A DNA stretch of 64,000 bases from IMGVR_UViG_3300023199_000204:62001-126000; one strand, 5' to 3'. Positions 1,777 to 46,352 are shown, counted from the first letter of the stretch. Made by a program: numbers and translations. The notes: generated by a model not told the origin, from the letters alone.

Positions 1777-3795
1777 ATGGCACAAGATACACTTCCGGTT
1801 CAAATACCATTTCCGGAGGAAGGCGAACAGCCAAAAACATATTCTGAACAATTATCGCAACTTAACTGTGTTTGTTCAGGAGGGGCAATAATTAGTCCAA
1901 TAACACTTCCTAGTGCTACAGTTAATTTAGGAGATATTATTGCTGATCATTCTAGAGTATTATCTAATTTTGCCTCAGCCTACAGTGTAATTACAATAAT
2001 TCTAAGAATGATTGCCTGTATTATAGATGTCTTATGTGCTATTCCCAACCCCTTTGCTATGATTTCGGCAATGATTAAGCTTTTTGGCACTTGTTTGCCG
2101 GAATTAATCCTTATATTTCCCCAATTTGCGATAATTGCCATTATTTTATGTTATATTAAAATAGTTATATCAATTATTGAATATATTCTTGAGGTCATAC
2201 TTCCATTAATTATTGATATTATTGCTAATGTTCAAACTTTAATTGATGCTTTTGAGAGTGGAAATGGAGATGCTCAGGCGGCAGTGGCATTTAAAATAGT
2301 TGCTTTGATAAAAGAAATGTTTAATGTTGTTGGAATTACATCGGCACTGGCAGCTCTTTTTATTATGATTAAAGCGATTATAAATCTTGGCGTAGGAATT
2401 CCTTGTGGAGGCTCTGGCGGCTCTTGTTCAGGTTGTGGTGATGATCAGTGCCCATCAGTAATCCAAGAGGATGATTTATCTGGAATAGATGGATCATTAA
2501 TAGTTTTATATGGAGAAGATATTTTTGATTATGAAATAAGATTTTTTTCGTCTTCCGCACAAAGCAGTTTTCTTCAAATAAGAGAATTTTTTCCAAAAGG
2601 TCTCAATTATAATGAAATGTCCGCTGAAGATATTCCTTATATCTTAACAGTAGATGGTCAAGACTATGCCATAACTTCTGTAGATAGTGGGGGAACGGCT
2701 CAGTTGTTTCAAATACCTAATGAAGAAAGATCTGATGGATATTTATCATCTTTTGTTTTCCCTCCAACAGCTTTGGCATCTGATCAGGTAAGGTTTGGAA
2801 CAGATACGGAATTTTTTGATTCGTCTTTTTCAGGTAGATATTTAGATATTTCAGATAGAAATGAAAGCACTTCTGACGATAATAGTGGAACCTGGTATAT
2901 ATCTTCAGTTATAGATGCTTATAACGTGGTGTTAGATAGCGATCCAAATGCCATTGGTAGTAGTACATTTAGTGGATTTAGTTCATTAAATCCAGAGCGA
3001 CACATTACTTGGAAATTAACTTCGTCAGCCCCATCACCAGGCGGAAGCAAAACTTTTTTAATGGATATTAACCATAACGAACTTATAAGGCACCAGTTAA
3101 TAGGACTAGGCTGTCACCCTTCGGTAAAGGCAACAAGAGATGCCACAGAAAATAGGTTCCCCGACGCAGCTAATGTAGATTTTCCAGAATTTCCTGATTT
3201 AAATGCCGTTGTTTCAGATCTTAATAATTGTGTTACAGCAATAGCTCCAATAACTGTAGATAGCTCTTATGTTTTAGATAATTATCAATCTATAGCTTCT
3301 GGAGCGGCGGAGCTTGAAGATTGTATTCAAGGAGTTTTGGGGCCATTTCAGGCGAATATGTTAAGTTATGCTAATCAGATATATCCTAGGGTTCTTGATA
3401 GAGAAAATAGTTTATTTGTAGCTAAACCCACAACTCAAATTATTGGAAATAATATATTGATTAGTGTTACTCCTTTAGATATTTATGGAGGACTATTATC
3501 GGCAGGGTTGCCTCCGGGAACAATTGTTGTTTCCATAAGTGCCACAGCAGGTAGCCTTTCAGAAGTTACTGAAGAGCTAGATGATGATGGAAATGTTACA
3601 GGAGTTTTTACAGCAGTATTGAGTAGCACTAAGGTATTAAGTTCAACACTAACTGCTCAGGTTGGAGGCCAATCTTTAAGTGATTTTGATGGCTCAACCC
3701 TTGTTGATAAAACTATTGAAGTAGAATTTATTGAGAAGTTTAGAACAGGAGATATAGATGATGGTCCCGAACCTCTTGGCGTTGGAGAGCAATAA
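1777..3795 (+). CDS. Putative virion protein: long hydrophobic helical N-terminus, Cys/Gly hinge, C-terminal Ig-like domain
   Basis: AAGGAG RBS; 672 aa; aa ~65-205 strongly hydrophobic; GGSGGSCSGCGDDQC; C-terminal Big-1-like beta pattern (GVFTAVLSSTKV..STLTAQV); baseplate context. Confidence 0.5.
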   Translation: MAQDTLPVQIPFPEEGEQPKTYSEQLSQLNCVCSGGAIISPITLPSATVNLGDIIADHSRVLSNFASAYSVITIILRMIACIIDVLCAIPNPFAMISAMIKLFGTCLPELILIFPQFAIIAIILCYIKIVISIIEYILEVILPLIIDIIANVQTLIDAFESGNGDAQAAVAFKIVALIKEMFNVVGITSALAALFIMIKAIINLGVGIPCGGSGGSCSGCGDDQCPSVIQEDDLSGIDGSLIVLYGEDIFDYEIRFFSSSAQSSFLQIREFFPKGLNYNEMSAEDIPYILTVDGQDYAITSVDSGGTAQLFQIPNEERSDGYLSSFVFPPTALASDQVRFGTDTEFFDSSFSGRYLDISDRNESTSDDNSGTWYISSVIDAYNVVLDSDPNAIGSSTFSGFSSLNPERHITWKLTSSAPSPGGSKTFLMDINHNELIRHQLIGLGCHPSVKATRDATENRFPDAANVDFPEFPDLNAVVSDLNNCVTAIAPITVDSSYVLDNYQSIASGAAELEDCIQGVLGPFQANMLSYANQIYPRVLDRENSLFVAKPTTQIIGNNILISVTPLDIYGGLLSAGLPPGTIVVSISATAGSLSEVTEELDDDGNVTGVFTAVLSSTKVLSSTLTAQVGGQSLSDFDGSTLVDKTIEVEFIEKFRTGDIDDGPEPLGVGEQ

Positions 3796-5462
3796 TGGTT
3801 GAAAATTCAGCAGTAAATTCTGCTTTTAAATTTGATTTAATTACTTTCGCAAAGAATATAATAAAGGAAATTGAAGGGGCTCGCTCTTATCAAAAAGTTA
3901 CGGACGAGAAAACTAGTCAAGGATTTACATTACCAACAGAGAGTAGAGTTAATGCTTTATTTAGACTAATAGGTTTGCCCTATTTTGTAGTTTTTGAAAA
4001 CAAAGGGGAAGAGGAAAATAATCAAAATGAACCATTATCTTCAGGAAATAGAGTTTTAACTCCAGGATATGATAGTGAGTTTAGCGGCAAGCTTTCAGCA
4101 TATAAGATTAAAAATTTAGATGCTATTGGAGATGTTAAAATTGATGAAACAGTTTCTAGAAGAGAGCTAGAATTATCAAAAATAGAAAACTCTATTGGTA
4201 CAAATGAAACCAATGCCGCTATGTCAAGTTCTTTATTATTTTCTATGGGATTGGAACCTAATATTCCAGAAAAGGGGTTAGGTTCAGGGGAAATTGGTCC
4301 GACAAACAACAGAAGAACTGTTTATAAAAAACTTAAGCCGTTAGTGCCAAATTACAACACTAGTGGAATATTTCCTAAATCTAATTCTCTAGCAAGGCCG
4401 TTTTTGCCTGATTTGAGAAGACAAATTTTAGACAATCAGACTGTTTTGGCAAAGCCATTTATTGAGACGGTTATTAGAATTAGATTAGTGGGTCTGGAAT
4501 CTTCAAAATCGTTTGATCAGACAATAAAGCAAATTGATTATCTTGATTCTGTTCAAAATGATTTAGGAGATGACTTATTTTTTGAACTATTTCCAGATGG
4601 AGTGGGTGTTCTAGCACAAACAAATGCTTTAGAAAGATTTATTTTAGATAAAATGCTGACTTCAATTAACCAGCTAGCAATAAAGTGGGTTGAATTAGAA
4701 AAGAATCAAGAACAGGTTCGTAAAAAAAGAGCATTTAAGATCGTAGTCAGAACAACTTCTGCGAAAACCAATCCTCTCGGTAGAAGGGCACAGGTTGAGA
4801 CAAATTTAACTACACTGTCTAATTATAATGATGGAAAGAAGATTAAAAAGCTTAAAAAACAAATAGCTGTTGATGAGGCACTTTTAAGTCTTTTGCCCAC
4901 AGATGATACTGTTACTGGTAATAAGAAAAATCCTAAATTATCATCAACAAAAAATGTGGTTTCCTCAGGATTAATAAATTCTTTTACTAATATACTTAAT
5001 CAAGATTTAAGTAGATTTCAGAAAGAATTAAAAAAGTTACAAGCGGACATATCACGGTCAGCCAAAAATATTGAAAATTTAAGAGTTGAGCTTGATTTAA
5101 TGACAGGAGAGTTTACTGGCGTATCAATCCCAGACATTGTTGCTATAATAATAGGTTTGTTTCTAATATCAAAAAAAGATTTGCTAAACCTGCTAGATCA
5201 AGAAACAAGAGATAATCTTTCAGCGGACCCAGTATTGAAAACAGCCATAGAGAGTTTGAATTTATCTAGCACTTCAGCGACCCCTTCTTCAGTTATAGAA
5301 TCAGTTAAAAAATTGGAGACACAGGTGGATAGTGTATTTAGTGCTTTAAATGCTCAAATAGAGATAGTTAGGGATAGAATTAAGCCTTCCAAGCTAAATA
5401 AACAGCAAGGTAGAAAGAAAAAAGAAAATATTAACAGAAACTATGATTTAGAGGGAGAATAG
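3795..5462 (+). CDS. Hypothetical helical/coiled-coil protein in baseplate module
   Basis: 555-aa ORF coupled (TAATG) to the upstream gene; no recognisable motif. Confidence 0.6.
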   Translation: MVENSAVNSAFKFDLITFAKNIIKEIEGARSYQKVTDEKTSQGFTLPTESRVNALFRLIGLPYFVVFENKGEEENNQNEPLSSGNRVLTPGYDSEFSGKLSAYKIKNLDAIGDVKIDETVSRRELELSKIENSIGTNETNAAMSSSLLFSMGLEPNIPEKGLGSGEIGPTNNRRTVYKKLKPLVPNYNTSGIFPKSNSLARPFLPDLRRQILDNQTVLAKPFIETVIRIRLVGLESSKSFDQTIKQIDYLDSVQNDLGDDLFFELFPDGVGVLAQTNALERFILDKMLTSINQLAIKWVELEKNQEQVRKKRAFKIVVRTTSAKTNPLGRRAQVETNLTTLSNYNDGKKIKKLKKQIAVDEALLSLLPTDDTVTGNKKNPKLSSTKNVVSSGLINSFTNILNQDLSRFQKELKKLQADISRSAKNIENLRVELDLMTGEFTGVSIPDIVAIIIGLFLISKKDLLNLLDQETRDNLSADPVLKTAIESLNLSSTSATPSSVIESVKKLETQVDSVFSALNAQIEIVRDRIKPSKLNKQQGRKKKENINRNYDLEGE

Positions 5463-5891: not shown

Positions 5892-5901
5892 GGGATTTTA
5901 A

Positions 5902-8900
5902 ATGGTTGATTTTAAAAGTTTTAATAATATAGTGCTTGATATGATACAATCTTTGCGTCTTACGCAACCAGCACTTGACACAAAACCAAATACGGTAGCA
6001 AGAGATTTATTTGTTGACACCCAGGCTCTTCAGCTTGCCAACATATATGAAGCTATGAGAGAAGTTGCGGCTTTACAATCTATCGCCAATCTAACTGGAC
6101 AGGATTTGGTTAACTATGGTGCTAACTTTGGAGTAGAAAAAAGAAGTGGGACTAAATCTATCGGCACAGTTGTTTTTACATTTAGATCTCTTGATAGTGA
6201 TATTACTATAGAAGAAGGAACCGTTGTTAGATCTAGGGGAGGAATTCCATTTTTAACTGTATCTTCGGCAAATGCTTTAGTTTCTCAAAGCAATGCCTTA
6301 AGAGCAACAGCTACAAGACTTAGAAATCAATTAGACACTGCTGGAATTACTGATGAATTTGCTTTAGAAGTTTCTGTAGAGTCACAGAGTTCAGGGTCCT
6401 CAGGGAATATTTCCCAATATTCAATTGTAAGTCATTCTGCGGCAGGGGTAAATTCTGTAACAAATGTTACATCATTTAGCGGAGGAACAGATTCTGAAAC
6501 GGACGCTGCCTTTAGGTCCAGAATACTTTCAGTTTTTGCTGGCGCAAACACAGGAACGGCCTTAGGGTACAGGAGTATTGTTTTGGGCCTGGCAGATGCC
6601 ATTGACGCCCTTGTAATTGAACCAGGAAGCACTTTAATGACCAGAGATGGAACAATAGTTGTCACTGATGACGATGGCAACACAGTTGTTTCTGAGCCCG
6701 GCACGGGCGGAAGGGTTGATATTTATGTTTTAGGAGAAAACCCTCAGTCTGGAACAGATAGTTTTGTATATAATGATCAAAGCGGAGAGACAGATCCTAC
6801 TGATGATTCCAACAACTATATACTTGGACAAAGTTCATTAACTGCCGATGCCAGTTTAACTTTAAATTTAAGACGCGTGACCACCTTGTCTGGAACTTCT
6901 GACATTCCTCTTCAGCCAGTAACGTCAATTGTTTCTGTAAGTGGCAGCTCTTCTGGGCCTAACTTTATTGAAGAGTTTTTAGATACAGACGGAAATCTAA
7001 AAGGAAACTATAGGTTGGAAAAAGATTCCGGCTCTGCCTCTGGGAGCCCATTTGGTCTTGACAAGATGGTCTGGATTTCTGACAGAATAGATTTAGAAAG
7101 TGAATCAAGGACAAAAGGCAGTTTAAACTCAGTTGATGAGTTGGCATTTACGGATGTTTTAGAAATTTATGCTTCATCTCAGGATATTCAAGTAACAAAT
7201 GAAAATTCAACAGTTTCTTCTTCAAGAAACTCCATAACAACTTTACACTCTCCAGTAAGAACTGTATCAAGAGTTTTTAACCTGACAACTGGAGAAAGAT
7301 ATACTATTACAGACCAAAATCCAGATGGAGATGGAAATATAAATGGCACTGGTAGAGTTCTAATAAGTGGCAGAACTTTACCAACAGTAAGTGATATTTT
7401 ACAGGTTGATTATACCTGGGTTTATGATTTTGATTCAGGTATAGATTTTGATCATTTAAATCCACAGGATTCTTTAAATTCTTCACAGGATTCTATAGAC
7501 TGGGGCTATTCAAATTATATCAGAGACGAGCCCTCAACTGCTGTTTTAGATGCTTATAGTAATTTACACGTTCAAACAAATTATTTTATAAGCAAGGTAA
7601 TTTCCGTAAATACTTTCGTTTCTGAAACATCAGTTATTACTGGAACTACCACAGGTAAAACAATTGTAACAAATAACCCTGTATCTAATATACATAGTAT
7701 AATTGACACATCTATATCTGGTTCGCCAGAAATATATAACACAAAAGAATCAGATGGAGTATTTTCAAATCTTTTAATATCACTTCCTTCCGATACAGTG
7801 GCACAGGTAGGAGATACAGTAACTATTACATATAACCTTAATGATATTTTTAACATAGATGGTTATGATTCTGGAACTTACGCAAATAAATTAATTACTT
7901 TAAATCCAAACACAGCAACATCAACTGGCACAAGTGTATTAGTTAATTATGTTACTGAGTTAGAAAATTTAATTCCACAAACAGATATTTCATCATTATC
8001 TATTTCATCAAACGGTCTTAACGGTTTTGTTGAAGTTGACGGTTATCAGCCAGTATTGAATAGATTTTCAGGGCCCAGTAACACTATAATAGATAATCAA
8101 AGGCGCTCTCCATCAAAACTTAGGGTTAATGTATCTAATATTCCAAACAATGGTGTTATTAGAGTGGTAGGAACTACTATAAATAAAATTGATTCAACAT
8201 ACATTTCTACTTCATCCTCTTCTATAAATTTTGCTTCTCTTATACGTGAAGCGGAGGGTTTAAGTGAAATAGCAACAGTTCCTAATACAATATACATAGC
8301 TAAAGTTGTTAAATTACAACAGGTAACTTTATCCGACAACGGAGAAATTCAGTCAGTTGATTTAGAATATGATTTAACAAATTATAAAATCGGCGACTCT
8401 TCCTGGGATATTGCTAATTCCTTAGAAGACATTAGTATTAATAACACCTCTATGGTGTTAAGTGGTGTTTCAGCAAACACTTCATCTCTAATTTTAACAG
8501 GAACTGTAGTTAGGGTCATATTTTACTACGCAAAACTCAATGATTATGAAGATTTGTTTTTCTCTAGAAATGGAATAATGACAACAAATAAAACATTTGG
8601 GCACATTGATTCTTTAAATAGATTTTCTGGGTTCCAAGATTCTGGCGGAACAATTTCTGGAAAAGTTTTGGTAGATTCTTTTAATCAGCCGGCAGAAAAT
8701 TCATCTTATTTTGTAGATTATTCATATACTGCTCCAAAAGAAAATGAAAGAATTACGGTTAATTTTGAATATAATAAACTTATAGTTGATGCGACAGAGG
8801 CCATAGAGGATAATCGCCCAATAACAGCTGATGTTCTGGTGAAATCTGCGGTAGAAGTAGAATTAGATGTTGATGCCTATATAGTTGTTGAAGAAGAGTT

Positions 8901-12100: not shown

Positions 12101-15100
12101 TATTGAGCAATTAGCAGAAGCTTTTACTCAAATAATTCCTAACATTACTGAAGAATTTTATCAAGAGCTGATATTAGGAAGAGATAAGCTATATCTGTCT
12201 GAAATGAAGTTAGAGGCAAATAGTGATGATGAGCTACCTACATTCTCTCCAGGGAAATTTGGTAATGGATTATTGCTTGACAAATCTGGACAAACAGCTT
12301 CACTTCCAGCCAACTCGAATATAAGCTTAAGAGAAGGTACTTGGGAGGCATTTGTAACAAATAATTGGGATGGTATTGAAAATGATGCTACATTGACATT
12401 TAATCCACTATTTGAAGGTTATGGAGATACTAGCAAAGTATTTATTGGATCTAATAGTTTAAACCCTACCGAAATACCTTTTACATTAAATAAAGACGAC
12501 GTAAGTTCTTTAGGTAGGCCAAATCTTCTACATCAAGAAATAGGCCATTTTATTTGGTATGATACTAGTTCAAAAAAATGGAGAGTTAGGGTAAGGGCTC
12601 CAATTTCAGAGGAGAGATTATTTTCTGGAACAATTGGGACTAGTGGTGAGTTTAACAATGTTAAGATAGCAACAACTGCTGATGGATATGATGGGTATGA
12701 GGGATATGAGGTAAATGAAATAAATGATGTAATTAGATCAACAGATGCGTCAGTCAAATATGCTTTTATTGTTGATTCATATGATTCCATAAATATGGCA
12801 TTTGACAGCTATGATTCATATTCTGGCGGTGGCCTTGCTGGATTTGATGGCATCGATTTTACGTCAGATAATTTACATTACTTGCTTGATGTTGCTGACA
12901 ATCCAACTAAAAATAGATTGAGCTTGTATAAGGATGGAAGGGGATTTTTAAGATTTAGAGTATATGATAACAATAGCAGAATAAAACAAGTAAGTTATAA
13001 TGTAAATTCTTGGGAAAAATCAGATACTCATCACGTTGGAATTTCTTGGAAAATGAACACTTCGGAAATGCAGGATGAAATTCATCTTTTTGTTGATGGA
13101 GAAGAGGCTCCAAATACATATAAGTATGGAGGATATTTAACTCCAGACGACGGCACAAATTTTATGGACCCTGCTTCTGAAATTTTAGCTTCTTCTACTA
13201 CTGTCCCTACAATAGGTGGATTTGATTTACAAACAACTCTGGGCTCAAGTGTTGTTTCATCTAATAGTTCAATATTTACTTCTGAATTAATAGGAGCTAG
13301 ATTCTTAATTTTAGATGATACGGATGATGGAGACGCTACCCAGGAATCTCCTTATGTATTCATTAAAAATGTTTTATCTCCAACTGAATTATCATTAGAG
13401 ATTGGACCAGTGGGGTCTGCTATTGACTATAATGCTCAAGCAACTCTATCTAATGTTAAATTTTCAGCAAATCCTCTTGATGTTGAAATGAGATTAGACC
13501 CATCAGTTGAGTTAATAAAACTTTTTTCAATAGATTCGTATGGGGAAGAGACAGAGCTATATTCACAAAACACAAATACTCCAGATTATGAATTTTATGA
13601 AGACGGGTATAAAGAAAAAGTTAATGTTTATGATGGCGTGGGAATTAATGACCAATTAATATTGAGATCTTACGGTTTATCTTCAGCTAGAGTTAGGCAG
13701 CAAGCATATATATGGGCAGACAAAACAACAAATATTTTAAGAACTATAGTTCCTAGCCCTACTTCAGTTGATAAGGTTTTCATAACTTCTATAATTTCAC
13801 AACCTACTCAAATTAGTGTAGGAGATTTTGCCCTAGTGGCAATGGTTGTTGGTGTAGATATAGTTCCAGTTTTAGTGGGCAGTGTAGATTTTTGCCAACC
13901 ATCTAACGAAACAACTGGAAGAACTTTAAAGGCAATGATATCAGGAAGTAATTTTGATTTTAATGGAGTAAATCAGGTTTCGATTATTGGAAATACAACT
14001 GATGGGTATGGGTCAGAGACTTTAGTTTTTAATGAAGTTGGTTCTTTAGTTACTTCTAGATTCTTTACAACAATAACTGATATAATTGTAAGCCTGACCC
14101 CTTCAGACCCAACTGAATCTGTTGGTTCTGTAGAGATAAGGGAGGCTCTTCCATTAACAATTTCTGAAAATGGGGGCGATGCCGCAGAAGTTCATTTGTC
14201 AGTACAACAGCAATACGGATTAGATGGATATACTACAATAGGAACAGGAAGATTAACTGACGGATATTCTAGATTTGGAGAAGAAGATATTGGGAAAACA
14301 ATTAATATTGTTTCTCCGGCGAGCATTGCTGGTCCATACTATATAGATGATGTTTTATTAGATCCATCTGGTGTTGTCAAAGATTCAAATACAGTTGTCT
14401 TAGACACTACTTGGTCAGACGCTTATACTAGTGTTGAATGGAATATGATTTCAACAAGCTATGGAGACAGTGGCTTTGCTAATGGATTAATAACTTTGGA
14501 AACAGCTGACAGTGGAGGAGATCCATTTTTGTTACGAAGTTGCTGGTATGAAGTTGATTTCCCTACATATTTAACTATTCCGTGGAATACTACACCAGAC
14601 AGGTTGTATGTTGGTTCAGATTATTTAGGAGAAAATCAAGCTAAAGCTGTTATTGATGAAATGAGAATTTTAAATGAGCTATCTTTAAGTACTGGTAGAG
14701 GAGAATCTGCTCCAAGCTCTGGAAGGTCTATTACAACTGATGCTCAAGTTGTTCAAGAATATACAGAGTCTATTAACACTCTAGGCTTATTTCACTTCAA
14801 TGATTCTGTTGAAAATTCTGCTAATTTTTATTCCAAATATGATCGCTCATTTAGACAAAGTGAAAATAGTGTTAATTTAAACTTTGGGCAGTCAATTGTA
14901 TTTAATATTAATAAACCACTAATAGTTGATAATGCTTCAATTTTTCAAAATAACGAGGGCACTATTGAATTTTGGATTAGCCCAATATTAGATACATATA
15001 ATGATCCAACTAGAAGATATTATATAGATTTAAGTCCAGAAGTTACGGCGACAGCCACTGTTATATCAAATCTTACAATTTCTTTACCAGTTAGGGCAAG

Positions 15101-15989
15101 AAGTATTAGTTCTGTAACAATTCCAAACAGTAATACTAATTATTTTATAGGAGGTGGCCTGTCAAATAATGGTCAAGCAATAACTTTAGGTCAGGCTTTG
15201 CCCTCTACATTAGTAACTGCTACAGTAACATATGTTCCTATTGCTAATCAAGGAGATAGATTTAGTATATATAAAGATGAAGTTGGTAATTTAGTATTAT
15301 ATGTTAGTGCTTCTGGAACAGATTATCAAATTAGAACTCCGATCCATTGGAAGAAAAATACTTGGCACAGAGTTTTTGCTGGTTGGAACTTAAACAATTC
15401 TGATAATCAAGACACTCTTCATTTTCTCGTTGATGGTGATGAAGGTGGAATTATTAGATATGGAACTGGACTTTTATATGGAGCGGGAAATCTATATGGT
15501 CAGCCAACTGTATGGGGTTCCGCTACTTTAGGAACAATAGCTTCGAGAAACATCCTATCTGATATTAATTTAACTGATACTTTTAACAAAATTAATATAG
15601 GGGCAGATTTTTCTGGGGACCTAACTGCTTTGGCACGAATGGATAATTTAAGAATATCGAGTGCCTTAAGAGATATAACATATCTTGGAGGGACTGGTCC
15701 TGGACAATTAATAGGTAAAGATTTACTTTATACTAGCAATGTAAATGCTGCTCTTCCAGTAGTTGAGGATGCTTTTACTAGATTATTATTAAACTTTGAT
15801 ACTACAGAGGAAGAAGTTGAATATTTAGCAAAAATTAGAAATTCTTCTAGTGGGATTTTTGATTTTTATGTAGAGGTAATAGATACTTTTGACTTAGCAG
15901 ATACTGATTTAATCCATAGCATAATAACTGCTTTATATAATAGAATAAAACCAGCTCATACAAGGGCATTTGTGAGCTTTACTGAATAG
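9153..15989 (+). CDS. Giant (2278 aa) baseplate wedge protein, P2 gpI/T4 gp7-like, with LamG/ConA-like domains
   Basis: Internal LRDNFG...LDRETYR...GPTIPSIEQL segment and C-terminal IKPAHT are typical of gpI-like wedge proteins. LamG-like motifs: EGTIEFWISP, WKKNTWHRVFAGW, HHVGISW, IDEMRI. Confidence 0.7.
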   Translation: MANNIRINGVNVKSSVKIEVTFTHGIGSISIENISIEGIGGDPNATILSIEINSNALTINTRPILPRGYYKLTLSSTSSSMIEGARGESFLVDGATNVYYFTGPEDDNPIRDNILSDVPGVYDTDPGGLLFDSIDASASEIQTSNNRTGEVRSANYVSVTVEDELKTRGAGPFDRFANEGVYEIIRVGSVETGTTDSAEISFLEFPSDPVSLQQASITDEEVSNVSNDSNSFVGLLITLANKPIIKVSSIVLTRGNTDYEYNISQYKYGILENKYDSNNSYPALDIEENQIRLSTSAVGSSFPLPQGSDVITVSYLYKKVGRDVGDDSVSVTTLTNIVRESVPAVSTSFFLQNAPIVDESNSIPTTGGVLFLDPLVNFDPDENHPSFVNEIPFSISSFPSSVGEYTVNYKTGQVIVFGSNGSGFDGTTTIPPVATYTYRQTYQSGLDYTFSASLNEVASLPGRDLRGGPGTISFEYEDAFTEGTDFSFLSHVEVIDERVENRLIETIGVKTENNFVNEVFRIYNETTGEIYFPSRVSGNEVYFSASNPPRLNNITMEAAVFTTSIQSQIIVTDTLSVTGKSFVVFRIELENTKIASATSDFIGASFNSSLILSDADTFVSERYYDSGDSLDDNLIRLQSVGDYMVDYSSGLVYVAVNSGSGTDIGDATYKYGEVSTRNNHIVRVNDLYRSAGVNTDHSKIFTIGAISDSSIGISNLNEIGERTYDGSVLIVDNNGTNDTITVDNDIFKLRSIFQVTDLQTELIPINFATRAVVSSSNPNVITLSSLGVPVEDTYLTVALSGTRKYITCDRIQSLFDSGLAQVVSATSVIDSYSMVNYFSQGSDGYISAVENRVYLPSSTGALPGDIVNVIYNAKLNAGAAVLVDYSIGDIFVDYTYTPDEILISYEYGDNVLDWSISNSVAEGEEYFVSYKYGALRNSLRDNFGILSSVSEILTIPEELDRETYRNAITGTLQSFPKGPTIPSIEQLAEAFTQIIPNITEEFYQELILGRDKLYLSEMKLEANSDDELPTFSPGKFGNGLLLDKSGQTASLPANSNISLREGTWEAFVTNNWDGIENDATLTFNPLFEGYGDTSKVFIGSNSLNPTEIPFTLNKDDVSSLGRPNLLHQEIGHFIWYDTSSKKWRVRVRAPISEERLFSGTIGTSGEFNNVKIATTADGYDGYEGYEVNEINDVIRSTDASVKYAFIVDSYDSINMAFDSYDSYSGGGLAGFDGIDFTSDNLHYLLDVADNPTKNRLSLYKDGRGFLRFRVYDNNSRIKQVSYNVNSWEKSDTHHVGISWKMNTSEMQDEIHLFVDGEEAPNTYKYGGYLTPDDGTNFMDPASEILASSTTVPTIGGFDLQTTLGSSVVSSNSSIFTSELIGARFLILDDTDDGDATQESPYVFIKNVLSPTELSLEIGPVGSAIDYNAQATLSNVKFSANPLDVEMRLDPSVELIKLFSIDSYGEETELYSQNTNTPDYEFYEDGYKEKVNVYDGVGINDQLILRSYGLSSARVRQQAYIWADKTTNILRTIVPSPTSVDKVFITSIISQPTQISVGDFALVAMVVGVDIVPVLVGSVDFCQPSNETTGRTLKAMISGSNFDFNGVNQVSIIGNTTDGYGSETLVFNEVGSLVTSRFFTTITDIIVSLTPSDPTESVGSVEIREALPLTISENGGDAAEVHLSVQQQYGLDGYTTIGTGRLTDGYSRFGEEDIGKTINIVSPASIAGPYYIDDVLLDPSGVVKDSNTVVLDTTWSDAYTSVEWNMISTSYGDSGFANGLITLETADSGGDPFLLRSCWYEVDFPTYLTIPWNTTPDRLYVGSDYLGENQAKAVIDEMRILNELSLSTGRGESAPSSGRSITTDAQVVQEYTESINTLGLFHFNDSVENSANFYSKYDRSFRQSENSVNLNFGQSIVFNINKPLIVDNASIFQNNEGTIEFWISPILDTYNDPTRRYYIDLSPEVTATATVISNLTISLPVRARSISSVTIPNSNTNYFIGGGLSNNGQAITLGQALPSTLVTATVTYVPIANQGDRFSIYKDEVGNLVLYVSASGTDYQIRTPIHWKKNTWHRVFAGWNLNNSDNQDTLHFLVDGDEGGIIRYGTGLLYGAGNLYGQPTVWGSATLGTIASRNILSDINLTDTFNKINIGADFSGDLTALARMDNLRISSALRDITYLGGTGPGQLIGKDLLYTSNVNAALPVVEDAFTRLLLNFDTTEEEVEYLAKIRNSSSGIFDFYVEVIDTFDLADTDLIHSIITALYNRIKPAHTRAFVSFTE

Positions 15990-16002
15990 GAGGAGATAGA
16001 TT

Positions 16003-18816
16003 ATGGCTACTACTAAAAGGTTGCCGGTAGGAATAGGATTCGTTAATTGGCACGATGGGCAGCGTATAATAGAAGAAGATGTTGAAGCTGATCAAAATAG
16101 AAACACCAGCATAGACGCCGCCAATGTTGCCAATTTTATGGGAAGTGGAATTTTACGTTCTGATAGTGAACCTATCGTCATATTAGATACAAATTCTTTA
16201 AACGACACTCAAGAAGCACTATTTGATAGCTATGCTTTTGATGGACAAGATGTATATATAGGCAGTGTTAATGATGTTAGTGATTCTATCAAAGGAGTTC
16301 AACTTTCTGTAACACTATCTGATGTTGATTTATCTGGTTCTGAAACCACTAGAGTTTGTATAATAGGTGATACATTTGGGGATAGTTTGATATTTGATGC
16401 TCTTACATTTGAAGAAAATGGAACTCAGGTAACTAGGGGTAGGTACAAATCTATTCGTGGAATATTGTTTCAAGACTTTTTTGGAAATTTAAGAGGAAGT
16501 AGAAGTCCTGCGGCAGACGACGGGTATAATAAAACTGGCAGGTGTATAATAAGGGAGGTTGAAGCATTAGAGTGCTCAATTGATCCAATTATTGCTTCTC
16601 AAACCAATCAACCAAATAAGTTTTTTGAAGATTTTAATCCTGCTTTAAATTCTGATACAATTACCACTATGCTAGAAACAGCTATAGGCGCAGATAAATC
16701 TATTTCTGATATGGAAATAGGAATAGAAACATTTGCTCAAAGAGAGTTGGCAGTAAATGATGTTACTAAAAAAATTGGTCAGAAATTTTTAGCTAACGGA
16801 ACAAATATTCAGAAAATTTCTGTTCTCTTATCTGTTCAGCAAGATACTGCCGCCCTGCCGGCTGATGCTTATAATTGGTCTGGAAGTATTGCTTTGACTT
16901 TACATGCCCTTCAGACAGATGTTGATTGCCCAACAGACCCTATCCCAGACAACACTGTAGCTTTTGATCCAGAGCCCGCAATAATTGGTCAAATAACACT
17001 AGATTCAGATGATATGGAAAAGCAAGGAATTGTTCTAGACGGCTACTCAAGAAAAGTAGATTTTGTATTTACTGGAACAAATCTTTCTGACCCATCTCGC
17101 ACTCCTATTGAACTAAACAGATATTATGTACTAACAATAAGTAGAACTGGAGACGCAAGTGTGGGAACTTTGCTAGTTGAAGAAGCACCACATCGTGCTG
17201 ATAATGGATATATGACTATATTTGACGGCACTAGCTGGATTAATGTAAAAACTAGTGACCTGTGGTTTAGTGTAGAGGGCGACTATATTAAAATTTCTGA
17301 TGGTGTTGCTTACGAAGATGGAGTAGGAGTTGAGGTGTTAAAAATTGCTCCTGATGCTACAAACACAGAAGCACCGTATATAGAAGGTCTTATTGAATTC
17401 TCAACTGTAACAAAAGATGCTTATAATTATACTCTATTAGAGTCTAGCACAGCATTTTCAGATCAGGTTGAAGATGAGAGAACTGGCGTTCCTGTTTATA
17501 CAAGAGCAACACCTTCTCCAGAATTTTCAATATTAACTCAATCAAATCTTAATACATTGCTTGAAACAGATTTAACTCCAGTTTTATTATGTAGGGTAAA
17601 AGACCAAAATCCTAGAGGAAATCCATTGTCATTGACTGGGACAACAAACTCCATAGGTTTGGCTTTGGACAATGAATTTAATATTCTAGAGCCCAATGCC
17701 GATTTACAACAGCATAATTTAGTTGGCTCTTTACTTTACCCTAATTCGTCTCTTTCAGCCAACTATAGAATAATAAAAACAACCTTGATAAGCGATGCTT
17801 ATGGAGACGTTAATGGAGATGGAGAAATTGATAGTGATGATTTAGCATTAGCTCTAGCTCTTGACGGATATGATATTACAGCTACGGCAACTCAACAGTT
17901 AATTGCTGGAGGATATATTGATTTATTAGAATTTTTGCGTGCCGATGTTAATGGAGATGGGGCTGTAAATAGCACGGATGTTGGACTAATTTCTGGATAT
18001 ATTGATGGAAGTGTGGCTTCGTTTCCAGCAGGCTCCACATTCTCTAGGTTAAAAATTGATATAGAAAATACTACGGACCCGTTAGTTTCAGGAGCAGATA
18101 TTGATGGATCAGATGCGTCCTTTATAACTGCTCCATTTTCTCCGGTAGACTGGTCAATTCAATATTGTGCTTCTTGGTTGCCTGATAGAGTAGTATTTGA
18201 AGATTTAAGGAGATTTTTACCAACAACGTTTACTGAAACTTTATCTACAGAGCATCCAGGAGGACAAAATAATTTCTATGTTCCAGGAGATTTAATTATA
18301 GATGGTTATCAATTAAATAGAGATGGAACATATTATTCTGTTGATTTGGAAGTTAATCACTTATCATTAGATGTTCCTGTAATGGACTCATATGGAAATC
18401 CAACTTTCATAGATGGTTATACCGGAATACTTCTTTTTGATACCTTTGTGGCTGAATCTTCAGGGGGGAAAACAGCCTCTGGATTTAATGCTATGAAATA
18501 TGCTGATGGAACTTATGTTCAAATTGCGGACTATACTTCAGAAAAAGTAAAAATAGCACCAGCTATTCAATCTACTGCTCATACATTTCCAGTAACTGCT
18601 GGTGGAAATATCGAAGACATTGTAGGTATGCATTATGATGTTTCCTCTTCACTAGTAACTCTTTATTTGAACAATTTATATGACGACGGATATGGAAATA
18701 TACTTCCTCCAGTAAATACAAAACTTTTAGTTACTGTATATTTGAAAAAGGCAGGATTTAGAAATGAGACGCAATTTATTACAAAAGATCAAATGAAAAC
18801 ACTTTTGAACATTTAA
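16003..18816 (+). CDS. Tail/baseplate-associated protein with internal dockerin-like (double EF-hand-type) domain
   Basis: AGGAGGAG RBS; 937 aa; YGDVNGDGEIDSDDL...RADVNGDGAVNSTDVGLISGYI at ~17800-18009. Confidence 0.65.
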   Translation: MATTKRLPVGIGFVNWHDGQRIIEEDVEADQNRNTSIDAANVANFMGSGILRSDSEPIVILDTNSLNDTQEALFDSYAFDGQDVYIGSVNDVSDSIKGVQLSVTLSDVDLSGSETTRVCIIGDTFGDSLIFDALTFEENGTQVTRGRYKSIRGILFQDFFGNLRGSRSPAADDGYNKTGRCIIREVEALECSIDPIIASQTNQPNKFFEDFNPALNSDTITTMLETAIGADKSISDMEIGIETFAQRELAVNDVTKKIGQKFLANGTNIQKISVLLSVQQDTAALPADAYNWSGSIALTLHALQTDVDCPTDPIPDNTVAFDPEPAIIGQITLDSDDMEKQGIVLDGYSRKVDFVFTGTNLSDPSRTPIELNRYYVLTISRTGDASVGTLLVEEAPHRADNGYMTIFDGTSWINVKTSDLWFSVEGDYIKISDGVAYEDGVGVEVLKIAPDATNTEAPYIEGLIEFSTVTKDAYNYTLLESSTAFSDQVEDERTGVPVYTRATPSPEFSILTQSNLNTLLETDLTPVLLCRVKDQNPRGNPLSLTGTTNSIGLALDNEFNILEPNADLQQHNLVGSLLYPNSSLSANYRIIKTTLISDAYGDVNGDGEIDSDDLALALALDGYDITATATQQLIAGGYIDLLEFLRADVNGDGAVNSTDVGLISGYIDGSVASFPAGSTFSRLKIDIENTTDPLVSGADIDGSDASFITAPFSPVDWSIQYCASWLPDRVVFEDLRRFLPTTFTETLSTEHPGGQNNFYVPGDLIIDGYQLNRDGTYYSVDLEVNHLSLDVPVMDSYGNPTFIDGYTGILLFDTFVAESSGGKTASGFNAMKYADGTYVQIADYTSEKVKIAPAIQSTAHTFPVTAGGNIEDIVGMHYDVSSSLVTLYLNNLYDDGYGNILPPVNTKLLVTVYLKKAGFRNETQFITKDQMKTLLNI

Positions 18817-18828
18817 TGGAGTTTAACA

Positions 18829-20184
18829 ATGCCTAACGCACAAATTAAAATTAACGGAGGGTCAGCTGGTGTTAGTGTTGATACCATTGCTCTTGGAGCA
18901 ACTGTTAATTTATCAAATGATGATAATGATGGAGCGACATCTTGGAGATGGGAATTTATTTACAAACCTCCAACATCTTCTACAACGCTAACCACACCCA
19001 CTTCATCTACTTCAACATTTGTTGCTGACGTGGAAGGTTCTTATTTAATTCAACTTAAAGTAAATACTGTGATAAGAAGCAGAGTAATTGCGGCAGTTAA
19101 AACCATTGATAATTTAAGATTTATTGCCTCAAGTGAATCAAATGAACTGGGAGGCTGGGAAGAAACAATAAATGATAATTTTAAAAATCTTGTCTTAAAA
19201 GTAGAGGCAGGAGGAATTGGTGACGCTTATGGAAAAATTCAAGTAAGCTCAAATGATACAACTTTAGGATATTTAGAAGAAAAAGTTTTAGCAGGGCTAA
19301 ATACTTCATTTGTTGAAAATAATAACGGAAGCAATGAGAACTTAACAGTATCTACTACTGAAACTATAGGATTGCCAGAACAAGTTTCTACACCAGATAA
19401 TCTAGATAACTATGGTAATCTATATAGTTTTGATGTTGATGGATATACTGAATTATATTACTTAGACAATTATGGTAATTCTATTCAATTAACAAGTAAA
19501 GGACTAGATGCTTCTTCACAAGGCTATACTTTTATCGATGATTTTTCTGATTTTTCTATTGATTCTATGTGGAATCAAGACCCCCAATCAGGAACTATAA
19601 CTGAATATGATGGATATATTAGAATAACACACCCTGCCGCTTCATCTGAATGGACAGATGTTATACAAGAGGCTCCGAATATAAATTTCGCCATCCCTTT
19701 TCCTTCAGATTACAGTACAGTTGTTTATGTTACAGTAAATAATGCTGTAAATAACCAAGGTGCTCAGATTACAAGTTATTTAGGAGGGCAAAAAGACACT
19801 TTTACTCATCTCCAGCTTAAATATGAGTCAAGTTCTTGGCAAGTTCATGCATTAGATACTCCTGCCCATGTATTTCAAACTGTTCCAGTTGGAACTGGTG
19901 GAGCCGCAACCAACCCGATTGTTGTTGGACAAAGTTCGTGTTGGCTTCTTTTTGAAAGATACGGCAATGCCTCTATGTACGCTTATTCTTTAAATAGTTT
20001 AAATAATCCTCCTGATGTAAATAGCTGGATACAATTGGCAGCGAGAGGGAGTTTTCCTTTCCAACATTATAATAACTATATATCATTAAATGTTTTTAAC
20101 TTTAGCACTCATCCTGCCTGTAGTGCTGATTTTAGAGTTTTTAGATTTCATAATATTCGTGGACAAATTCATAAGTTTAGTTAA
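18829..20184 (+). CDS. Tail fibre/receptor-binding-like protein (N-terminal PKD/Ig-like, C-terminal ConA-like beta-sandwich)
   Basis: N-terminal PKD-like pattern (WRWEFIYKPP..S......TFVADVEGSYLIQLKV); lectin-like C-terminus; paralogous to the next gene. Confidence 0.55.
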   Translation: MPNAQIKINGGSAGVSVDTIALGATVNLSNDDNDGATSWRWEFIYKPPTSSTTLTTPTSSTSTFVADVEGSYLIQLKVNTVIRSRVIAAVKTIDNLRFIASSESNELGGWEETINDNFKNLVLKVEAGGIGDAYGKIQVSSNDTTLGYLEEKVLAGLNTSFVENNNGSNENLTVSTTETIGLPEQVSTPDNLDNYGNLYSFDVDGYTELYYLDNYGNSIQLTSKGLDASSQGYTFIDDFSDFSIDSMWNQDPQSGTITEYDGYIRITHPAASSEWTDVIQEAPNINFAIPFPSDYSTVVYVTVNNAVNNQGAQITSYLGGQKDTFTHLQLKYESSSWQVHALDTPAHVFQTVPVGTGGAATNPIVVGQSSCWLLFERYGNASMYAYSLNSLNNPPDVNSWIQLAARGSFPFQHYNNYISLNVFNFSTHPACSADFRVFRFHNIRGQIHKFS

Positions 20185-20208
20185 AAATAAATATCATAGG
20201 AGAATTAA

Positions 20209-20754
20209 ATGCCATTTTCAGTAATTAAAATTAATGGAGGTGCTGATGGACAAAGTGATGACACCATTACTTTAGGCTCAACAGTTACTTTAACAAGTGG
20301 AAATGATAGTGGTGCCACTTCTTGGAAATGGGAGCTTATTTATAAGCCACCCACATCATCTGCTGTTTTAAGTGGAGCCTCTACAAATACTGCTACATTT
20401 ACAGCCGATGCAGAAGGTTCATATTTAATTCAATTAACTATAAATTCATATATAAGAAGCAGAGCAATTACTGCCGTTAAAACTATTGATGGGATAAGAT
20501 ATATTGCTTCTCAAGAAGCAGCAGAACTTGGTGGCTGGGAAGAAACAATAAATGATAATATTGATCTTTTAATTAATAAAATAGATGATGGGTATTTGGA
20601 TAATATAAAGCTAGCTGAACAGGTAAGTGCGCCAGATGCTATAGATGATTATGGGATATTATATAGTTTTGATATTGATGGTTATTCTGAACTACATTAT
20701 GTTGATAATTTTGGAAATTTAATCCAGTTGACAAGTAAAGGCTCAGCGGCTTAA
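20209..20754 (+). CDS. Short paralogue of the preceding fibre protein lacking the C-terminal domain
   Basis: Shares the N-terminal ~120 aa and the EQVS.PD..D.YG.LYSFD.DGY.EL.Y.DN.GN.IQLTSKG block with 18829..20184, then stops. Confidence 0.7.
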   Translation: MPFSVIKINGGADGQSDDTITLGSTVTLTSGNDSGATSWKWELIYKPPTSSAVLSGASTNTATFTADAEGSYLIQLTINSYIRSRAITAVKTIDGIRYIASQEAAELGGWEETINDNIDLLINKIDDGYLDNIKLAEQVSAPDAIDDYGILYSFDIDGYSELHYVDNFGNLIQLTSKGSAA

Positions 20755-20774: not shown

Positions 20775-20810
20775 AAAGGGAAGTATAGAAATATGCTTCC
20801 CTTTTTCTTT
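20775..20810 (+). terminator. Intrinsic terminator closing the structural operon
   Basis: AAAGGGAAGTATA-GAAA-TATGCTTCCCTTT: 13-bp stem with one G-U pair and a GNRA loop, followed by TTCTTT. Confidence 0.85.
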
Positions 20811-30845: not shown

Positions 30846-30847
30846 AT

Positions 30848-33279: not shown

Positions 33280-33281
33280 TA

Positions 33282-37949: not shown

Positions 37950-37966
37950 TTAGAGGGATAAATAAA

Positions 37967-41239: not shown

Positions 41240-41251
41240 GAAATGCTAAAA

Positions 41252-46351: not shown

Positions 46352-46352
46352 T

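What the first reader, a model, noticed from the sequence alone, without database searches (positions are those of the whole stretch)
1777..20754. D-G-Y tripeptide massively enriched in virion proteins: candidate Tyr-glycosylation sequon of a phage virion-modification system
Seen: by manual count DGY occurs 20 times in six structural proteins totalling ~5,600 aa (1, 2, 7, 6, 2 and 2 in the ORFs at 1777, 5902, 9153, 16003, 18829 and 20209). There are also ~8 DAY, ~7 DSY and ~3 DNY. About a third of all DG dipeptides in these proteins are followed by Y. Sites are stacked in places: TADGYDGYEGYE...DSYDS...FDSYDSY at 12681-12821. Rough composition (D~8%, G~7%, Y~4-5%, my estimates) predicts only 1-2. 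I found no DGY in the 22.8-54.5 kb enzymes, only two in the rest of the window (59666 ORF, DnaB tail), and none in the hub, gp25 or 3795 proteins. Established: Tyr O-glycosylation occurs on Firmicute S-layers, Bacteroidetes use an Asp-led sequon D-(S/T)-x, and some mycobacteriophages and giant viruses glycosylate their own virions. Inference: D-[G/A/S/N]-Y is the acceptor sequon for the adjacent phage glycosylation island, giving a glycan-coated baseplate and fibres. I know of no such sequon described for phages.
Basis: partly seen in the sequence, partly recalled or inferred. Interest (0 to 1): 0.88.

Follow-up and report, generated by a model that had tools for sequence, protein, structure and literature searches.

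The report
DGY tyrosine motif on phage baseplates
The outer tail-tip proteins of a large group of giant phages carry the three-residue motif Asp-Gly-Tyr 13-21 times more often than chance, always next to a conserved sugar-transferase gene, so the motif is most likely a new attachment site for sugars on tyrosine, though no chemistry has been measured.

Summary
DGY occurs 20 times (1, 2, 7, 6, 2, 2) in the six ORFs, against 1.4 expected, and it is the most enriched tripeptide of the structural block. The signal is at protein level and depends on residue order. It is chemically strict (D>>N,E; G>A>S; Y>>F).

It is not peculiar to this genome. About 150 related jumbo-phage loci show 13-15-fold enrichment in baseplate and fibre proteins, and none in their enzymes. 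The flanks carry no information. Sites lie in loops and hairpin turns, are gained and lost at many positions, and pile up in variable-length tandem loops. These are the marks of a short linear motif selected for itself.

A conserved GT4 glycosyltransferase module (the first 393 aa of ORF 22811-25072) follows the DGY-rich module in every locus with enough flank. The rest of the 32-kb glycan island is variable and has no membrane or export genes. One subclade lacks this GT at the syntenic site, and its homologue has 0 DGY in about 8,700 aa. Phage G shows no excess; T4 shows a mild one (3.5x).

Tyrosine O-glycosylation is therefore the leading explanation (about 0.4) but is unproven. A binding motif or a turn motif remain open. 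DNY does not belong to the motif.

The parts
1777..3795 (+). 672-aa baseplate-region protein. DGY at nt 2734, DAY at 2914. The N-terminal third is hydrophobic.
   Evidence: Orthologues in L002 and L004 carry 5 DGY each, some in insertions.
5902..9153 (+). Baseplate J-like (T4 gp6-like) wedge protein, 1083 aa. DGY at 7858 and 8038; DAY at 7549 and 8872.
   Evidence: Pfam Baseplate_J 1e-23; sites; 28% identical to Bacillus phage G gp188.
9153..15989 (+). 2278-aa distal baseplate protein with a ConA-like/Laminin_G_3 domain. Seven DGY (11679, 12681, 12690, 13602, 14001, 14223, 14259), five DSY, one DAY.
   Evidence: AF2 model of aa 1130-1830 has pLDDT 87, with sites in hairpin loops and at strand edges.
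12681..12821 (+). Stacked-motif loop (DGY-DGY-EGY ... DSY ... DSY-DSY). It is a variable-length insertion between two conserved strands.
   Evidence: Relatives rebuild this loop from different numbers of DGY/DAY units, and the most distant ones lack it. pLDDT here is 57-75.
16003..18816 (+). 937-aa peripheral baseplate protein (called p937 here) made of beta-sandwich domains plus a dockerin module. Six DGY, three DAY, two DSY.
   Evidence: AF2 pLDDT 85, with all 11 sites in coil or at strand edges. Fold search.
18829..20184 (+). 451-aa fibre-like protein with a PKD-like domain. DGY at 19438 and 19609; DAY at 19222.
20209..20754 (+). 181-aa fibre-like protein: a PKD domain plus a C-terminal module shared with ORF 18829. 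DGY at 20587 and 20677.
20775..20804 (+). Terminator-like hairpin (13-bp stem followed by a T run) just after the last fibre gene.
22811..23989 (+). GT-N: the clade-conserved GT4 (GT-B) glycosyltransferase module with an E-x7-E motif. It is the candidate initiating transferase.
   Evidence: 36% identical to the stand-alone 364-aa GT of the distant relative L011 (E = 1e-76). HMM hits of 290-560 bits lie downstream of the p937 homologue in 64 of 80 loci and in L010, L011 and L015. Pfam. Conserved residues.
23990..25072 (+). Second, canonical GT4 module fused to GT-N in this phage.
   Evidence: Pfam Glycos_transf_1, 2.7e-42 for the whole 753-aa ORF (best stretch aa 582-718); PDB and NCBIfam matches to generic GT4 enzymes.
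25074..54493 (+). Variable glycan-biosynthesis island. It holds GT2 (four), GT47-like, GT77-like and GT29-like transferases, NeuB, a CMP-transferase, GmhA, GMD, DegT, epimerases, SDRs and methyltransferases. It has no multi-pass membrane protein.
   Evidence: hydropathy scan.
33282..34223 (+). NAD-dependent epimerase/dehydratase. Its homologue is the only other island gene kept in the minimal islands of distant relatives.

Best explanation
D-[G>A>S]-Y is a self-contained short linear motif kept at high density by selection. It sits in exposed loops and hairpin turns of the distal baseplate and fibre proteins of a large clade of tubulin-encoding jumbo phages. The most likely function is an acceptor site: the Tyr hydroxyl is O-glycosylated in the cytoplasm by the conserved GT4 module that always follows these genes (GT-N, window 22811-23989). 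Where present, the variable downstream island then extends the sugar, giving a glycan-decorated tail tip.

Shown: the enrichment; its residue and order specificity; its loop location; site turnover; tandem arrays; its spread across the clade; the two-way synteny with GT-N; the lack of lipid-carrier or export genes; and the joint absence of the syntenic GT-N and of DGY in the p937 homologue in one subclade.

Inferred: that Tyr is modified at all; that GT-N is the enzyme; and what the glycan is.
For: 1. Strength and spread.
- Window: 20 against 1.4 expected.
- 78 homologues of p937: 435 against 20.7.
- 80 loci anchored on p937: 884 against 67.6 in 314,216 aa of structural ORFs.
- 80 loci anchored independently on GT-N: 791 against 52.9 upstream of the GT, and 69 of 69 loci with enough upstream sequence have at least 4 DGY.

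2. Chemical strictness.
- In the structural set DGY:NGY:EGY = 884:63:12 although D and N are about equally common.
- DGY:DGF = 884:77 although F is commoner than Y.
- In the same phages' enzymes DGF (68) outnumbers DGY (33).
- Tyr columns of D-x-Y sites almost never show F. When the site is absent, polar residues take its place.

3. Autonomy.
- 841 distinct contexts carry at most 0.17 bit per flanking position, against about 4 bits at each of D, G and Y.
- 130 of 689 neighbouring sites lie within 6 aa of each other.
- The stacked loop is rebuilt from different numbers of units in different lineages.

4. Turnover. DGY occupies 47 distinct sites in 72 p937 homologues. None is universal and half occur in 3 or fewer sequences.

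5. Location. Sites lie in coil, in hairpin loops or at strand edges in two confident AF2 models. The hub, gp25-like, sheath-fragment, tube-like and tape-measure-like proteins have none.

6. Link to the GT.
- GT-N lies 1-7 kb downstream in 64 of 80 loci, and most of the misses are cut flanks. L023's contig has it about 2 kb beyond the fetched end. L052, with about 7 kb of downstream flank and no GT-N hit, remains unexplained.
- GT-N keeps the E-x7-E motif.
- The minimal islands are just GT-N plus an epimerase/dehydratase.
- No multi-pass membrane protein is encoded in the island, so there is no flippase, polymerase, ligase or priming transferase. This fits direct cytoplasmic transfer.

7. Joint absence. 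A monophyletic subclade has 0 DGY, DAY or DSY in the homologues scanned for all three (P0134, P0132, P0137 and the one on L109, about 7,580 aa), and 0 DGY in P0145 as well (about 8,700 aa in five homologues). Its gene order is homologue, epimerase, helicase, with no GT-N in 37 kb.

8. Outgroups. Phage G has 2 against 2.2 expected. T4 has 5 against 1.4.
Against: - No mass, stain or structure shows a modified Tyr.
- I know of no GT4 enzyme with a Tyr acceptor or a D-x-Y sequon (own knowledge). A search for 'DGY motif' found no paper.
- Non-target proteins do not clearly avoid the motif (33 against 43.1, P = 0.07).
- D-G is a classical beta-turn pair, and many sites sit exactly in two- to five-residue hairpin turns. 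T4 tail proteins show a mild 3.5x excess without any such GT.
- In the window a strong terminator-like hairpin separates the fibre genes from the island.
- The joint absence is a single evolutionary event. Those genomes are only partly sampled (37 kb), they keep an unrelated GT4-like gene 10 kb away, and their other structural proteins still hold 5 DGY in about 5,200 aa.
- Within the clade, synteny with GT-N is near-universal, so it cannot be separated from shared ancestry.
Confidence: 0.4

Rival explanations
1. Direct recognition motif. Asp and Tyr at hairpin tips form many weak binding spots, for example for host surface polysaccharide, on the parts of the tail that touch the cell. This would resemble the Tyr/Gly/Asp/Ser-rich loops of antibody paratopes. 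The neighbouring GT and island would then serve another purpose.
For: - The motif is confined to distal baseplate and fibre proteins and is absent from the hub, the gp25-like protein and the sheath and tube pieces.
- The carrier proteins are stacks of lectin/CBM-like beta-sandwiches with PKD and ConA-like domains.
- Sites sit at loop tips and turn over quickly, as receptor-binding surfaces do.
- Non-target proteins do not avoid the motif.
Against: - A general sticky composition would also enrich other orders of D, G and Y, but these occur only 1-4 times each.
- The strict D-x-Y register with an information-free context looks like recognition by one reader, not many different binding pockets.
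- It gives no reason for the near-universal synteny with one conserved GT, or for the joint absence.
Confidence: 0.25
2. Structural turn cap. Asp-Gly forms a tight beta-turn and the following Tyr packs on or hydrogen-bonds across the hairpin. The motif would simply be this lineage's preferred way to close hairpins in its beta-sandwich domains.
For: - Most mapped sites lie in 2-5-residue hairpin loops or at the first residue of a strand.
- Positions -1 and -3 are somewhat hydrophobic in the window's 35 sites.
- T4 virion proteins show a mild excess, 5 against 1.4.
Against: - Asn-Gly, the commonest tight-turn pair (own knowledge), is 14 times rarer than DGY here, and Phe is 11 times rarer than Tyr, whereas enzymes of the same phages prefer DGF.
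- Tandem arrays in low-confidence, variable-length loops are not hairpin caps.
- Sites are gained and lost at polar, variable columns rather than conserved with the fold.
- Phage G homologues have no excess.
- A whole subclade does without the motif in the same fold.
Confidence: 0.12
3. Some other chemistry on the same motif. The options are a different Tyr modification (sulfation, phosphorylation, nucleotidylation, oxidative cross-linking), metal binding by the carboxylate and phenolate (for example Fe3+), or Asp-Gly isomerisation. The responsible factor would be encoded outside the window or supplied by the host.
For: The need for both a carboxylate and a phenol hydroxyl fits several chemistries. 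Only 64 kb of a 316-kb genome was examined.
Against: No candidate enzyme for any of these lies in the window. The one gene consistently linked to the motif is a glycosyltransferase.
Confidence: 0.1
4. Artefact of composition, recent internal duplication, or a DNA-level signal.
For: None beyond the D-, G- and Y-rich composition of these proteins.
Against: - Shuffles give a mean of 1.5 and a maximum of 7, against 20 observed. A first-order Markov model expects 3.95.
- The contexts are unrelated.
- Synonymous codons are mixed and the signal is in the coding frame only.
- The result was replicated in about 150 loci.
Confidence: 0.01

Closest known systems
Virion glycosylation by phage-encoded glycosyltransferases in mycobacteriophages (Freeman et al. 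2023, cited as ref. 80 in PMC12582341; details from my own knowledge)
   Same: Phage GT genes lie beside structural genes and act in the cytoplasm on virion proteins. No lipid carrier or export step is needed.
   Different: In that system glycosylation has been demonstrated, on capsid and tail-tube proteins, and no Tyr sequon is described. Here nothing has been demonstrated, the carriers are distal baseplate and fibre proteins, the motif is D-[G/A/S]-Y, the GT is a distinct conserved GT4 module, and the island is far larger.
Virus-encoded glycosylation of chlorovirus and mimivirus capsids with atypical sequons (PMC9614988)
   Same: A large virus-encoded set of sugar-nucleotide enzymes and GTs, including methylated and rare sugars. 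Glycans are attached at sites that do not follow host rules, and probably in the cytoplasm.
   Different: Those are N-linked to Asn (NTXT, NIPG) on the major capsid protein of eukaryotic viruses. Here the candidate acceptor is Tyr on phage tail proteins.
Tyrosine O-glycosylation of Firmicute S-layer proteins (Paenibacillus alvei SpaA, Thermoanaerobacter; PMC2943079)
   Same: An O-glycosidic link to Tyr on a surface-exposed protein. The glycans contain rare sugars.
   Different: The S-layer pathway builds the glycan on a lipid carrier and transfers it outside the membrane with a multi-pass oligosaccharyltransferase. The window island has no multi-pass membrane protein, and the review found here gives no D-x-Y sequon for S-layers.
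Acidic-residue-led bacterial sequons: PglB D/E-x-N-x-S/T and Bacteroidetes D-S/T-[A/I/L/V/M/T]
   Same: A very short linear sequon in which an Asp one or two residues before the acceptor is required.
   Different: The acceptor is Asn or Ser/Thr, and the enzymes are periplasm-facing membrane transferases that use lipid-linked glycans. DGY and DAY contain no Ser, Thr or Asn.
Cytoplasmic GT4 glycosylation of repeat adhesins (SdgA/SdgB on Ser-Asp repeats; GtfA/GtfB on serine-rich repeat proteins)
   Same: Soluble GT4 enzymes decorate low-complexity, acidic, tandemly repeated motifs of surface adhesins before export or assembly.
   Different: The acceptor is Ser. The window GT matches these families only at generic GT4 level (46-62 bits against cut-offs of 575-800).

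Membership tests
Phage/virus-encoded virion glycosylation system | Glycosyltransferase genes encoded by the virus and linked to structural genes | tested here: met
   GT-N follows the baseplate/fibre module in 64 of 80 loci anchored on p937. In the reverse sampling, 68 of 69 GT-N-anchored loci with enough upstream sequence have the p937 homologue upstream.
Phage/virus-encoded virion glycosylation system | Glycan shown on virion proteins (mass spectrometry, staining or density) | not testable with these tools
   The genome comes from a metagenome and there is no isolate or proteome.
Sequon-directed protein glycosylation (general) | A short linear consensus around a hydroxyl or amide acceptor, independent of fold context | tested here: met
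   About 4 bits at each of D, G and Y and at most 0.17 bit in the flanks across 841 contexts. 47 distinct sites in one protein family.
Sequon-directed protein glycosylation (general) | Non-target proteins that meet the enzyme avoid the sequon | tested here: inconclusive
   33 against 43.1 expected in 285,253 aa of non-structural ORFs (ratio 0.77, P = 0.07).
Lipid-carrier / oligosaccharyltransferase pathways (PglB, PglL, S-layer WsfB type) | A multi-pass membrane oligosaccharyltransferase, a flippase and a priming phosphoglycosyltransferase | tested here: not met
   No island ORF has more than one marginal hydrophobic segment. No Pfam hit to Wzy_C, Wzx, Bac_transf or WecA-type families.
GT4 (GT-B, retaining) glycosyltransferases | A Glycos_transf_1 C-lobe with the E-x7-E motif | tested here: met
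   Pfam hits at aa 256-388 of GT-N. A Glu eight residues before a second conserved Glu (E285 and E293) is kept in 30 clade members.
SdgA/SdgB and GtfA adhesin O-glycosyltransferases | Orthology (NCBIfam equivalog score) and a Ser acceptor in repeats | tested here: not met
   46-62 bits against cut-offs of 575-800. The motif has no obligatory Ser.
Known repeat or domain families that could carry DGY (YD/Rhs repeats, cell-wall-binding YG repeats, dockerin/EF-hand loops, PKD) | DGY sites fall inside copies of a recognised repeat or domain profile | tested here: not met
   Pfam finds only Baseplate_J, Laminin_G_3, one dockerin, PKD and Invasin_D3. The DGY contexts are unrelated to one another. The dockerin calcium loops do not contain DGY.

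The most novel reading that the evidence does not exclude
A large, environmentally widespread clade of jumbo phages (372 GT-N relatives in IMG/VR) runs its own cytoplasmic protein O-glycosylation system with a previously undescribed tyrosine sequon, D-[G/A/S]-Y. A conserved GT4 starts the glycan on tens of exposed loops of the distal baseplate and fibres, and a fast-evolving island (2 to more than 30 genes, here including nonulosonic-acid and heptose pathways) diversifies it. The host-contacting end of the virion would then be coated with a lineage-specific glycan.
Probability: 0.38. Interest if true: 0.9.

Novelty: new variant of a known kind. Interest (0 to 1): 0.8.

Why it matters
If the tyrosines are glycosylated, this would be the first sequon-defined Tyr O-glycosylation system. 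It would also be the first protein-glycosylation sequon described for phages, and it is carried by hundreds of uncultured jumbo phages. It would show that phages can coat their receptor-binding apparatus with self-made, rapidly diversifying glycans, which bears on host range, resistance to proteases and defences, and phage engineering. A three-residue tag with a single soluble transferase would also be a useful tool for glycoengineering.

Even if the motif proves to be a binding or turn element, a tripeptide held at 13-21 times its chance density by constant gain and loss is an unusual case of selection on a minimal motif. It also gives a simple sequence marker for the distal tail proteins of this clade.

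Tried and rejected
- DNA-level motif: rejected. The signal is frame-specific, uses mixed codons and is absent from the - strand.
- Composition or dipeptide bias: rejected.
- Other orders of D, G and Y: not enriched.
- DNY as part of the motif: rejected.
- Known repeat families: none found.
- Whole-fold matches for the two AF2 models: uninformative. They show generic beta-sandwiches and one true dockerin.
- Sequon avoidance in enzymes: weak and not significant.
- Cultured relatives: megablast found nothing. tblastn found only phage G gp188 at 28%. GT homologues in cultured phages are distant Streptomyces-phage GTs and gave no usable test.
- Context of DGY-free homologues P0117 and P0145: their contigs are only 3.7 kb.
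- The record CACVFB010000001 is not in the annotated collections.
- The exact-sequence look-up of the upstream 1170-aa protein failed.
- P0134 alone found nothing in IMG/VR. The metagenome scan added only one new contig of the GT-less subclade, so GT-N absence from those whole genomes could not be settled.
- Papers by Zarschler 2010 and Freeman 2023 are not held.
Only secondary structure and pLDDT were used.

Full report
**1. What the window is**

The window is positions about 62,001-126,000 of IMGVR_UViG_3300023199_000204, a 316-kb uncultured jumbo phage. All large ORFs lie on the + strand. The layout is as follows.
- 48-20,754: a contractile-tail baseplate and fibre block. It holds a gp25-like sheath initiator at 5463, Baseplate_J at 5902, a 2278-aa protein with a ConA-like domain, a 937-aa protein with a dockerin, and two PKD-bearing fibre-like proteins.
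- 20,775-20,804: a terminator-like hairpin.
- 21,912: a LAGLIDADG endonuclease.
- 22.8-54.5 kb: a glycan-biosynthesis island.
- 55,452: a tubulin-family gene.
- Beyond that: replication genes.

The only cultured relative found is Bacillus phage G, whose baseplate wedge protein is 28% identical.

**2.

Direct translation reproduces every count: DGY = 1, 2, 7, 6, 2, 2; DAY = 8; DSY = 7; DNY = 3; and 20 of 62 DG dipeptides are followed by Y. There is no DGY in the hub-like, 3795 or gp25-like ORFs, and none in any island ORF. The two remaining in-frame sites sit in the 59666 open frame and at the end of the DnaB-like ORF.

The expected number is 1.4 from composition and 3.95 from a first-order Markov model. 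Two thousand per-protein shuffles gave a mean of 1.5 and never more than 7. DGY is the most enriched of 3,237 tripeptides (p = 7e-17) and DAY is second.

The effect depends on residue order, since the other five permutations occur 1-4 times. It acts on protein, not DNA: 20 of 21 GAYGGNTAY matches are in frame, with seven different codon combinations, and the other strand has none. DNY is not enriched.

**3. It is a property of a clade, not of this genome**

- Orthologues at about 62% identity carry 17-18 DGY in the same proteins. Many sites keep D and Y while G, A and S swap in the middle. Other sites are gained or lost, some in insertions.
- Seventy-eight homologues of the 937-aa protein (32-65% identical) hold 435 DGY against 20.7 expected, with DAY 152, DSY 49, NGY 37, DGF 6 and EGY 3.
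- A profile search found about 120 representatives at E < 1e-30, with 229 DGY against 18.8 expected overall but uneven between lineages.
- Eighty IMG/VR loci anchored on this protein (30-58% identical, many from 200-460-kb contigs) give 884 DGY against 67.6 expected in 314,216 aa of structural ORFs. ORFs from the first GT onward give 18 against 18.9.
- Fourteen kb upstream of the window (a sheath fragment, tube-like proteins, a 1568-aa protein and others) has no DGY, DAY or DSY.
- Controls: phage G tail and baseplate proteins have 2 against 2.2 expected. T4 virion proteins have 5 against 1.4.

**4. Anatomy of the motif**

Across 841 distinct contexts the three motif positions carry about 4 bits each and no flanking position more than 0.17 bit. 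Nineteen per cent of neighbouring sites are within 6 residues of each other.

The residue requirements are strict. D and N are equally common in these proteins, yet DGY:NGY is 14:1. F is commoner than Y, yet DGY:DGF is 11.5:1. In the same phages' enzymes DGF outnumbers DGY 68 to 33. In alignments the Tyr of D-x-Y columns is rarely replaced by Phe (none at 8 of the 12 well-occupied D-x-Y columns, 3-9 of 78 sequences at the other four). When the motif is absent the column usually holds polar residues.

In 72 distinct homologues DGY occupies 47 different sites. None is universal and half are in three or fewer sequences.

Two AF2 models (pLDDT 85 and 87) put the sites in coil, in 2-5-residue hairpin loops, or at the first residue of a strand. 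Only one of the 22 mapped sites lies wholly inside a strand.

The stacked region at 12,681-12,821 is a low-confidence loop inserted between two conserved strands. Relatives fill it with different numbers of DGY or DAY units, and the most distant ones have a short loop or none.

Together these are the features of a short linear motif selected for itself on exposed, evolvable surface.

**5. The linked glycosyltransferase**

ORF 22811-25072 is a fusion. Its first 393 aa (called GT-N here) are 36% identical (E = 1e-76) to a stand-alone 364-aa GT in a relative whose baseplate protein is only 34% identical. The second half is an ordinary GT4. GT-N is a divergent GT4 with the E-x7-E motif conserved.

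An HMM of GT-N hits at 290-560 bits, 1-7 kb downstream of the baseplate protein, in 64 of 80 loci and in three further contigs. Most of the misses have cut flanks. For one apparent exception (L023) the GT lies about 2 kb beyond the fetched end; L052 remains unexplained.

Sampling the other way, from GT-N, found 372 relatives in IMG/VR. In the best 80, all 69 loci with at least 2,500 aa of upstream ORFs have 4-18 DGY upstream (791 against 52.9 expected), and 68 have the baseplate homologue.

In distant members the island is just GT-N, an epimerase/dehydratase and a few small ORFs before the tubulin gene. The window's 32-kb island is therefore a lineage-specific expansion. It encodes:
- four GT2, plus GT47-like, GT77-like and GT29-like transferases;
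- NeuB with a CMP-transferase;
- GmhA with a HAD/nucleotidyl-transferase fusion;
- GMD, DegT, SDRs and five methyltransferases.

It has no multi-pass membrane protein. There is thus no flippase, polymerase, ligase or priming transferase, which points to assembly on a soluble cytoplasmic acceptor.

**6. A natural experiment**

On a tree of the baseplate protein, four representatives form a clade nested among DGY-rich ones and have no DGY at all. Five contigs of this subclade show the homologue (1,707-1,960 aa; 0 DGY, DAY or DSY) followed directly by the epimerase and the UvsW-like helicase.

GT-N and the tubulin gene are missing there, and GT-N is missing from 37 kb of contiguous sequence. A GT4-like gene 10 kb away is unrelated to GT-N (E = 0.08).

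The other structural proteins of that genome have 5 DGY in about 5,200 aa, roughly the T4 level.

This is the result the glycosylation hypothesis predicts. It is, however, one evolutionary event in incompletely sampled genomes.

**7. Interpretation**

The leading explanation is that Tyr in D-[G>A>S]-Y is the acceptor of a cytoplasmic O-glycosylation started by GT-N.

Against it:
- there is no chemical evidence;
- I know of no Tyr-directed GT4;
- non-target proteins do not significantly avoid the motif (0.77x);
- the fibre genes and the island appear to be separate transcription units in this window;
- D-G is a classical turn-forming pair.

The main rival is a direct binding role for Asp/Tyr hairpin tips on the host-contacting parts. 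That fits the location and turnover, but not the strict register or the GT linkage.

A pure turn-cap role is disfavoured by the exclusion of N and F, by the tandem disordered arrays, by site turnover, and by the subclade that dispenses with the motif.

Other Tyr chemistries cannot be excluded from 64 kb of a 316-kb genome.

**8. Comparison with known systems**

It works most like virus-encoded virion glycosylation (mycobacteriophages; chlorovirus and mimivirus capsids with atypical sequons, PMC9614988) and like cytoplasmic GT4 decoration of repeat adhesins (SdgA/B, GtfA/B).

It differs from S-layer Tyr O-glycosylation (PMC2943079) and from PglB or Bacteroidetes sequon systems in lacking any lipid-carrier or oligosaccharyltransferase machinery. 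It shares with them an Asp just before the acceptor.

It is not a member of the SdgA/B or GtfA families, nor of any known repeat family. No paper mentions a DGY motif.

**9. Verdict**

It is a new variant of a known kind (virus-encoded virion glycosylation), with a candidate new Tyr sequon. Interest is 0.8.

Noticed in passing
window 55452-56885: A tubulin/FtsZ-family gene (Pfam Tubulin 6e-14). It follows the glycan island in most clade members and is missing, together with GT-N, in the DGY-free subclade.
   Followed up: partly
window 30848-32182, 38056-39177, 56885-57586: Three proteins built from 5, 4 and 2 DUF4379 treble-clef zinc-finger repeats, two of them inside the glycan island. They account for the VWW, WWK, GCP, HEW and CPY tripeptide excess of the non-structural proteins. 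Similar genes sit in relatives' islands (L011, L015). Their function is unknown.
   Followed up: partly
window 21912-22814 and about 21332-21505; L096 1083-4231; L010 9237-10004 and 12837-13712: Many homing endonucleases. There is a LAGLIDADG gene and a decayed copy between the fibres and the island. Three endonuclease genes lie among the sheath and tube-like genes upstream of the window. LAGLIDADG genes flank the baseplate gene in a relative, and one relative's GT ORF has a faint LAGLIDADG_3 hit (a possible intein).
   Followed up: no
window 1777-3795 (aa 64-206): This tail protein has six strongly hydrophobic segments followed by a Cys/Gly-rich stretch in its N-terminal third. It may be a membrane-inserting tail-tip component.
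   Followed up: no
window 17794-18010 (aa about 598-670 of ORF 16003): A genuine type I dockerin module with two calcium-loop repeats inside a baseplate protein (Pfam, and Foldseek probability 1.0 to cellulosomal dockerins). This suggests cohesin-dockerin-like assembly in a phage tail. No cohesin partner was sought.
   Followed up: no
window 42951-45231, 47736-48374, 36211-37569: The phage encodes a nonulosonic-acid route (NeuB, CMP-transferase, GT29-like transferase) and a heptose route (GmhA, HAD plus nucleotidyl-transferase fusion). Both are unusual cargo for a phage.
   Followed up: partly
window 20775-20804: A terminator-like hairpin with a 13-bp stem and a T run directly after the last fibre gene. 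It is followed by about 1.1 kb of 28% GC DNA with no long ORF.
   Followed up: no
window 19380-19500 and 20620-20745: ORFs 18829 and 20209 share a module of about 45 aa made of D-x-Y-G and DGY hairpins that ends in a conserved 'IQLTSKG'. It is C-terminal in ORF 20209 (about aa 137-179 of 181) but internal in ORF 18829 (about aa 185-225 of 451), and it may be a common attachment or binding module.
   Followed up: no
L103/L104 1849-5169 (- strand): In the DGY-free subclade the ribonucleotide reductase large subunit carries an intein with a LAGLIDADG domain. The baseplate-protein homologue sits among replication genes rather than after the baseplate module.
   Followed up: no
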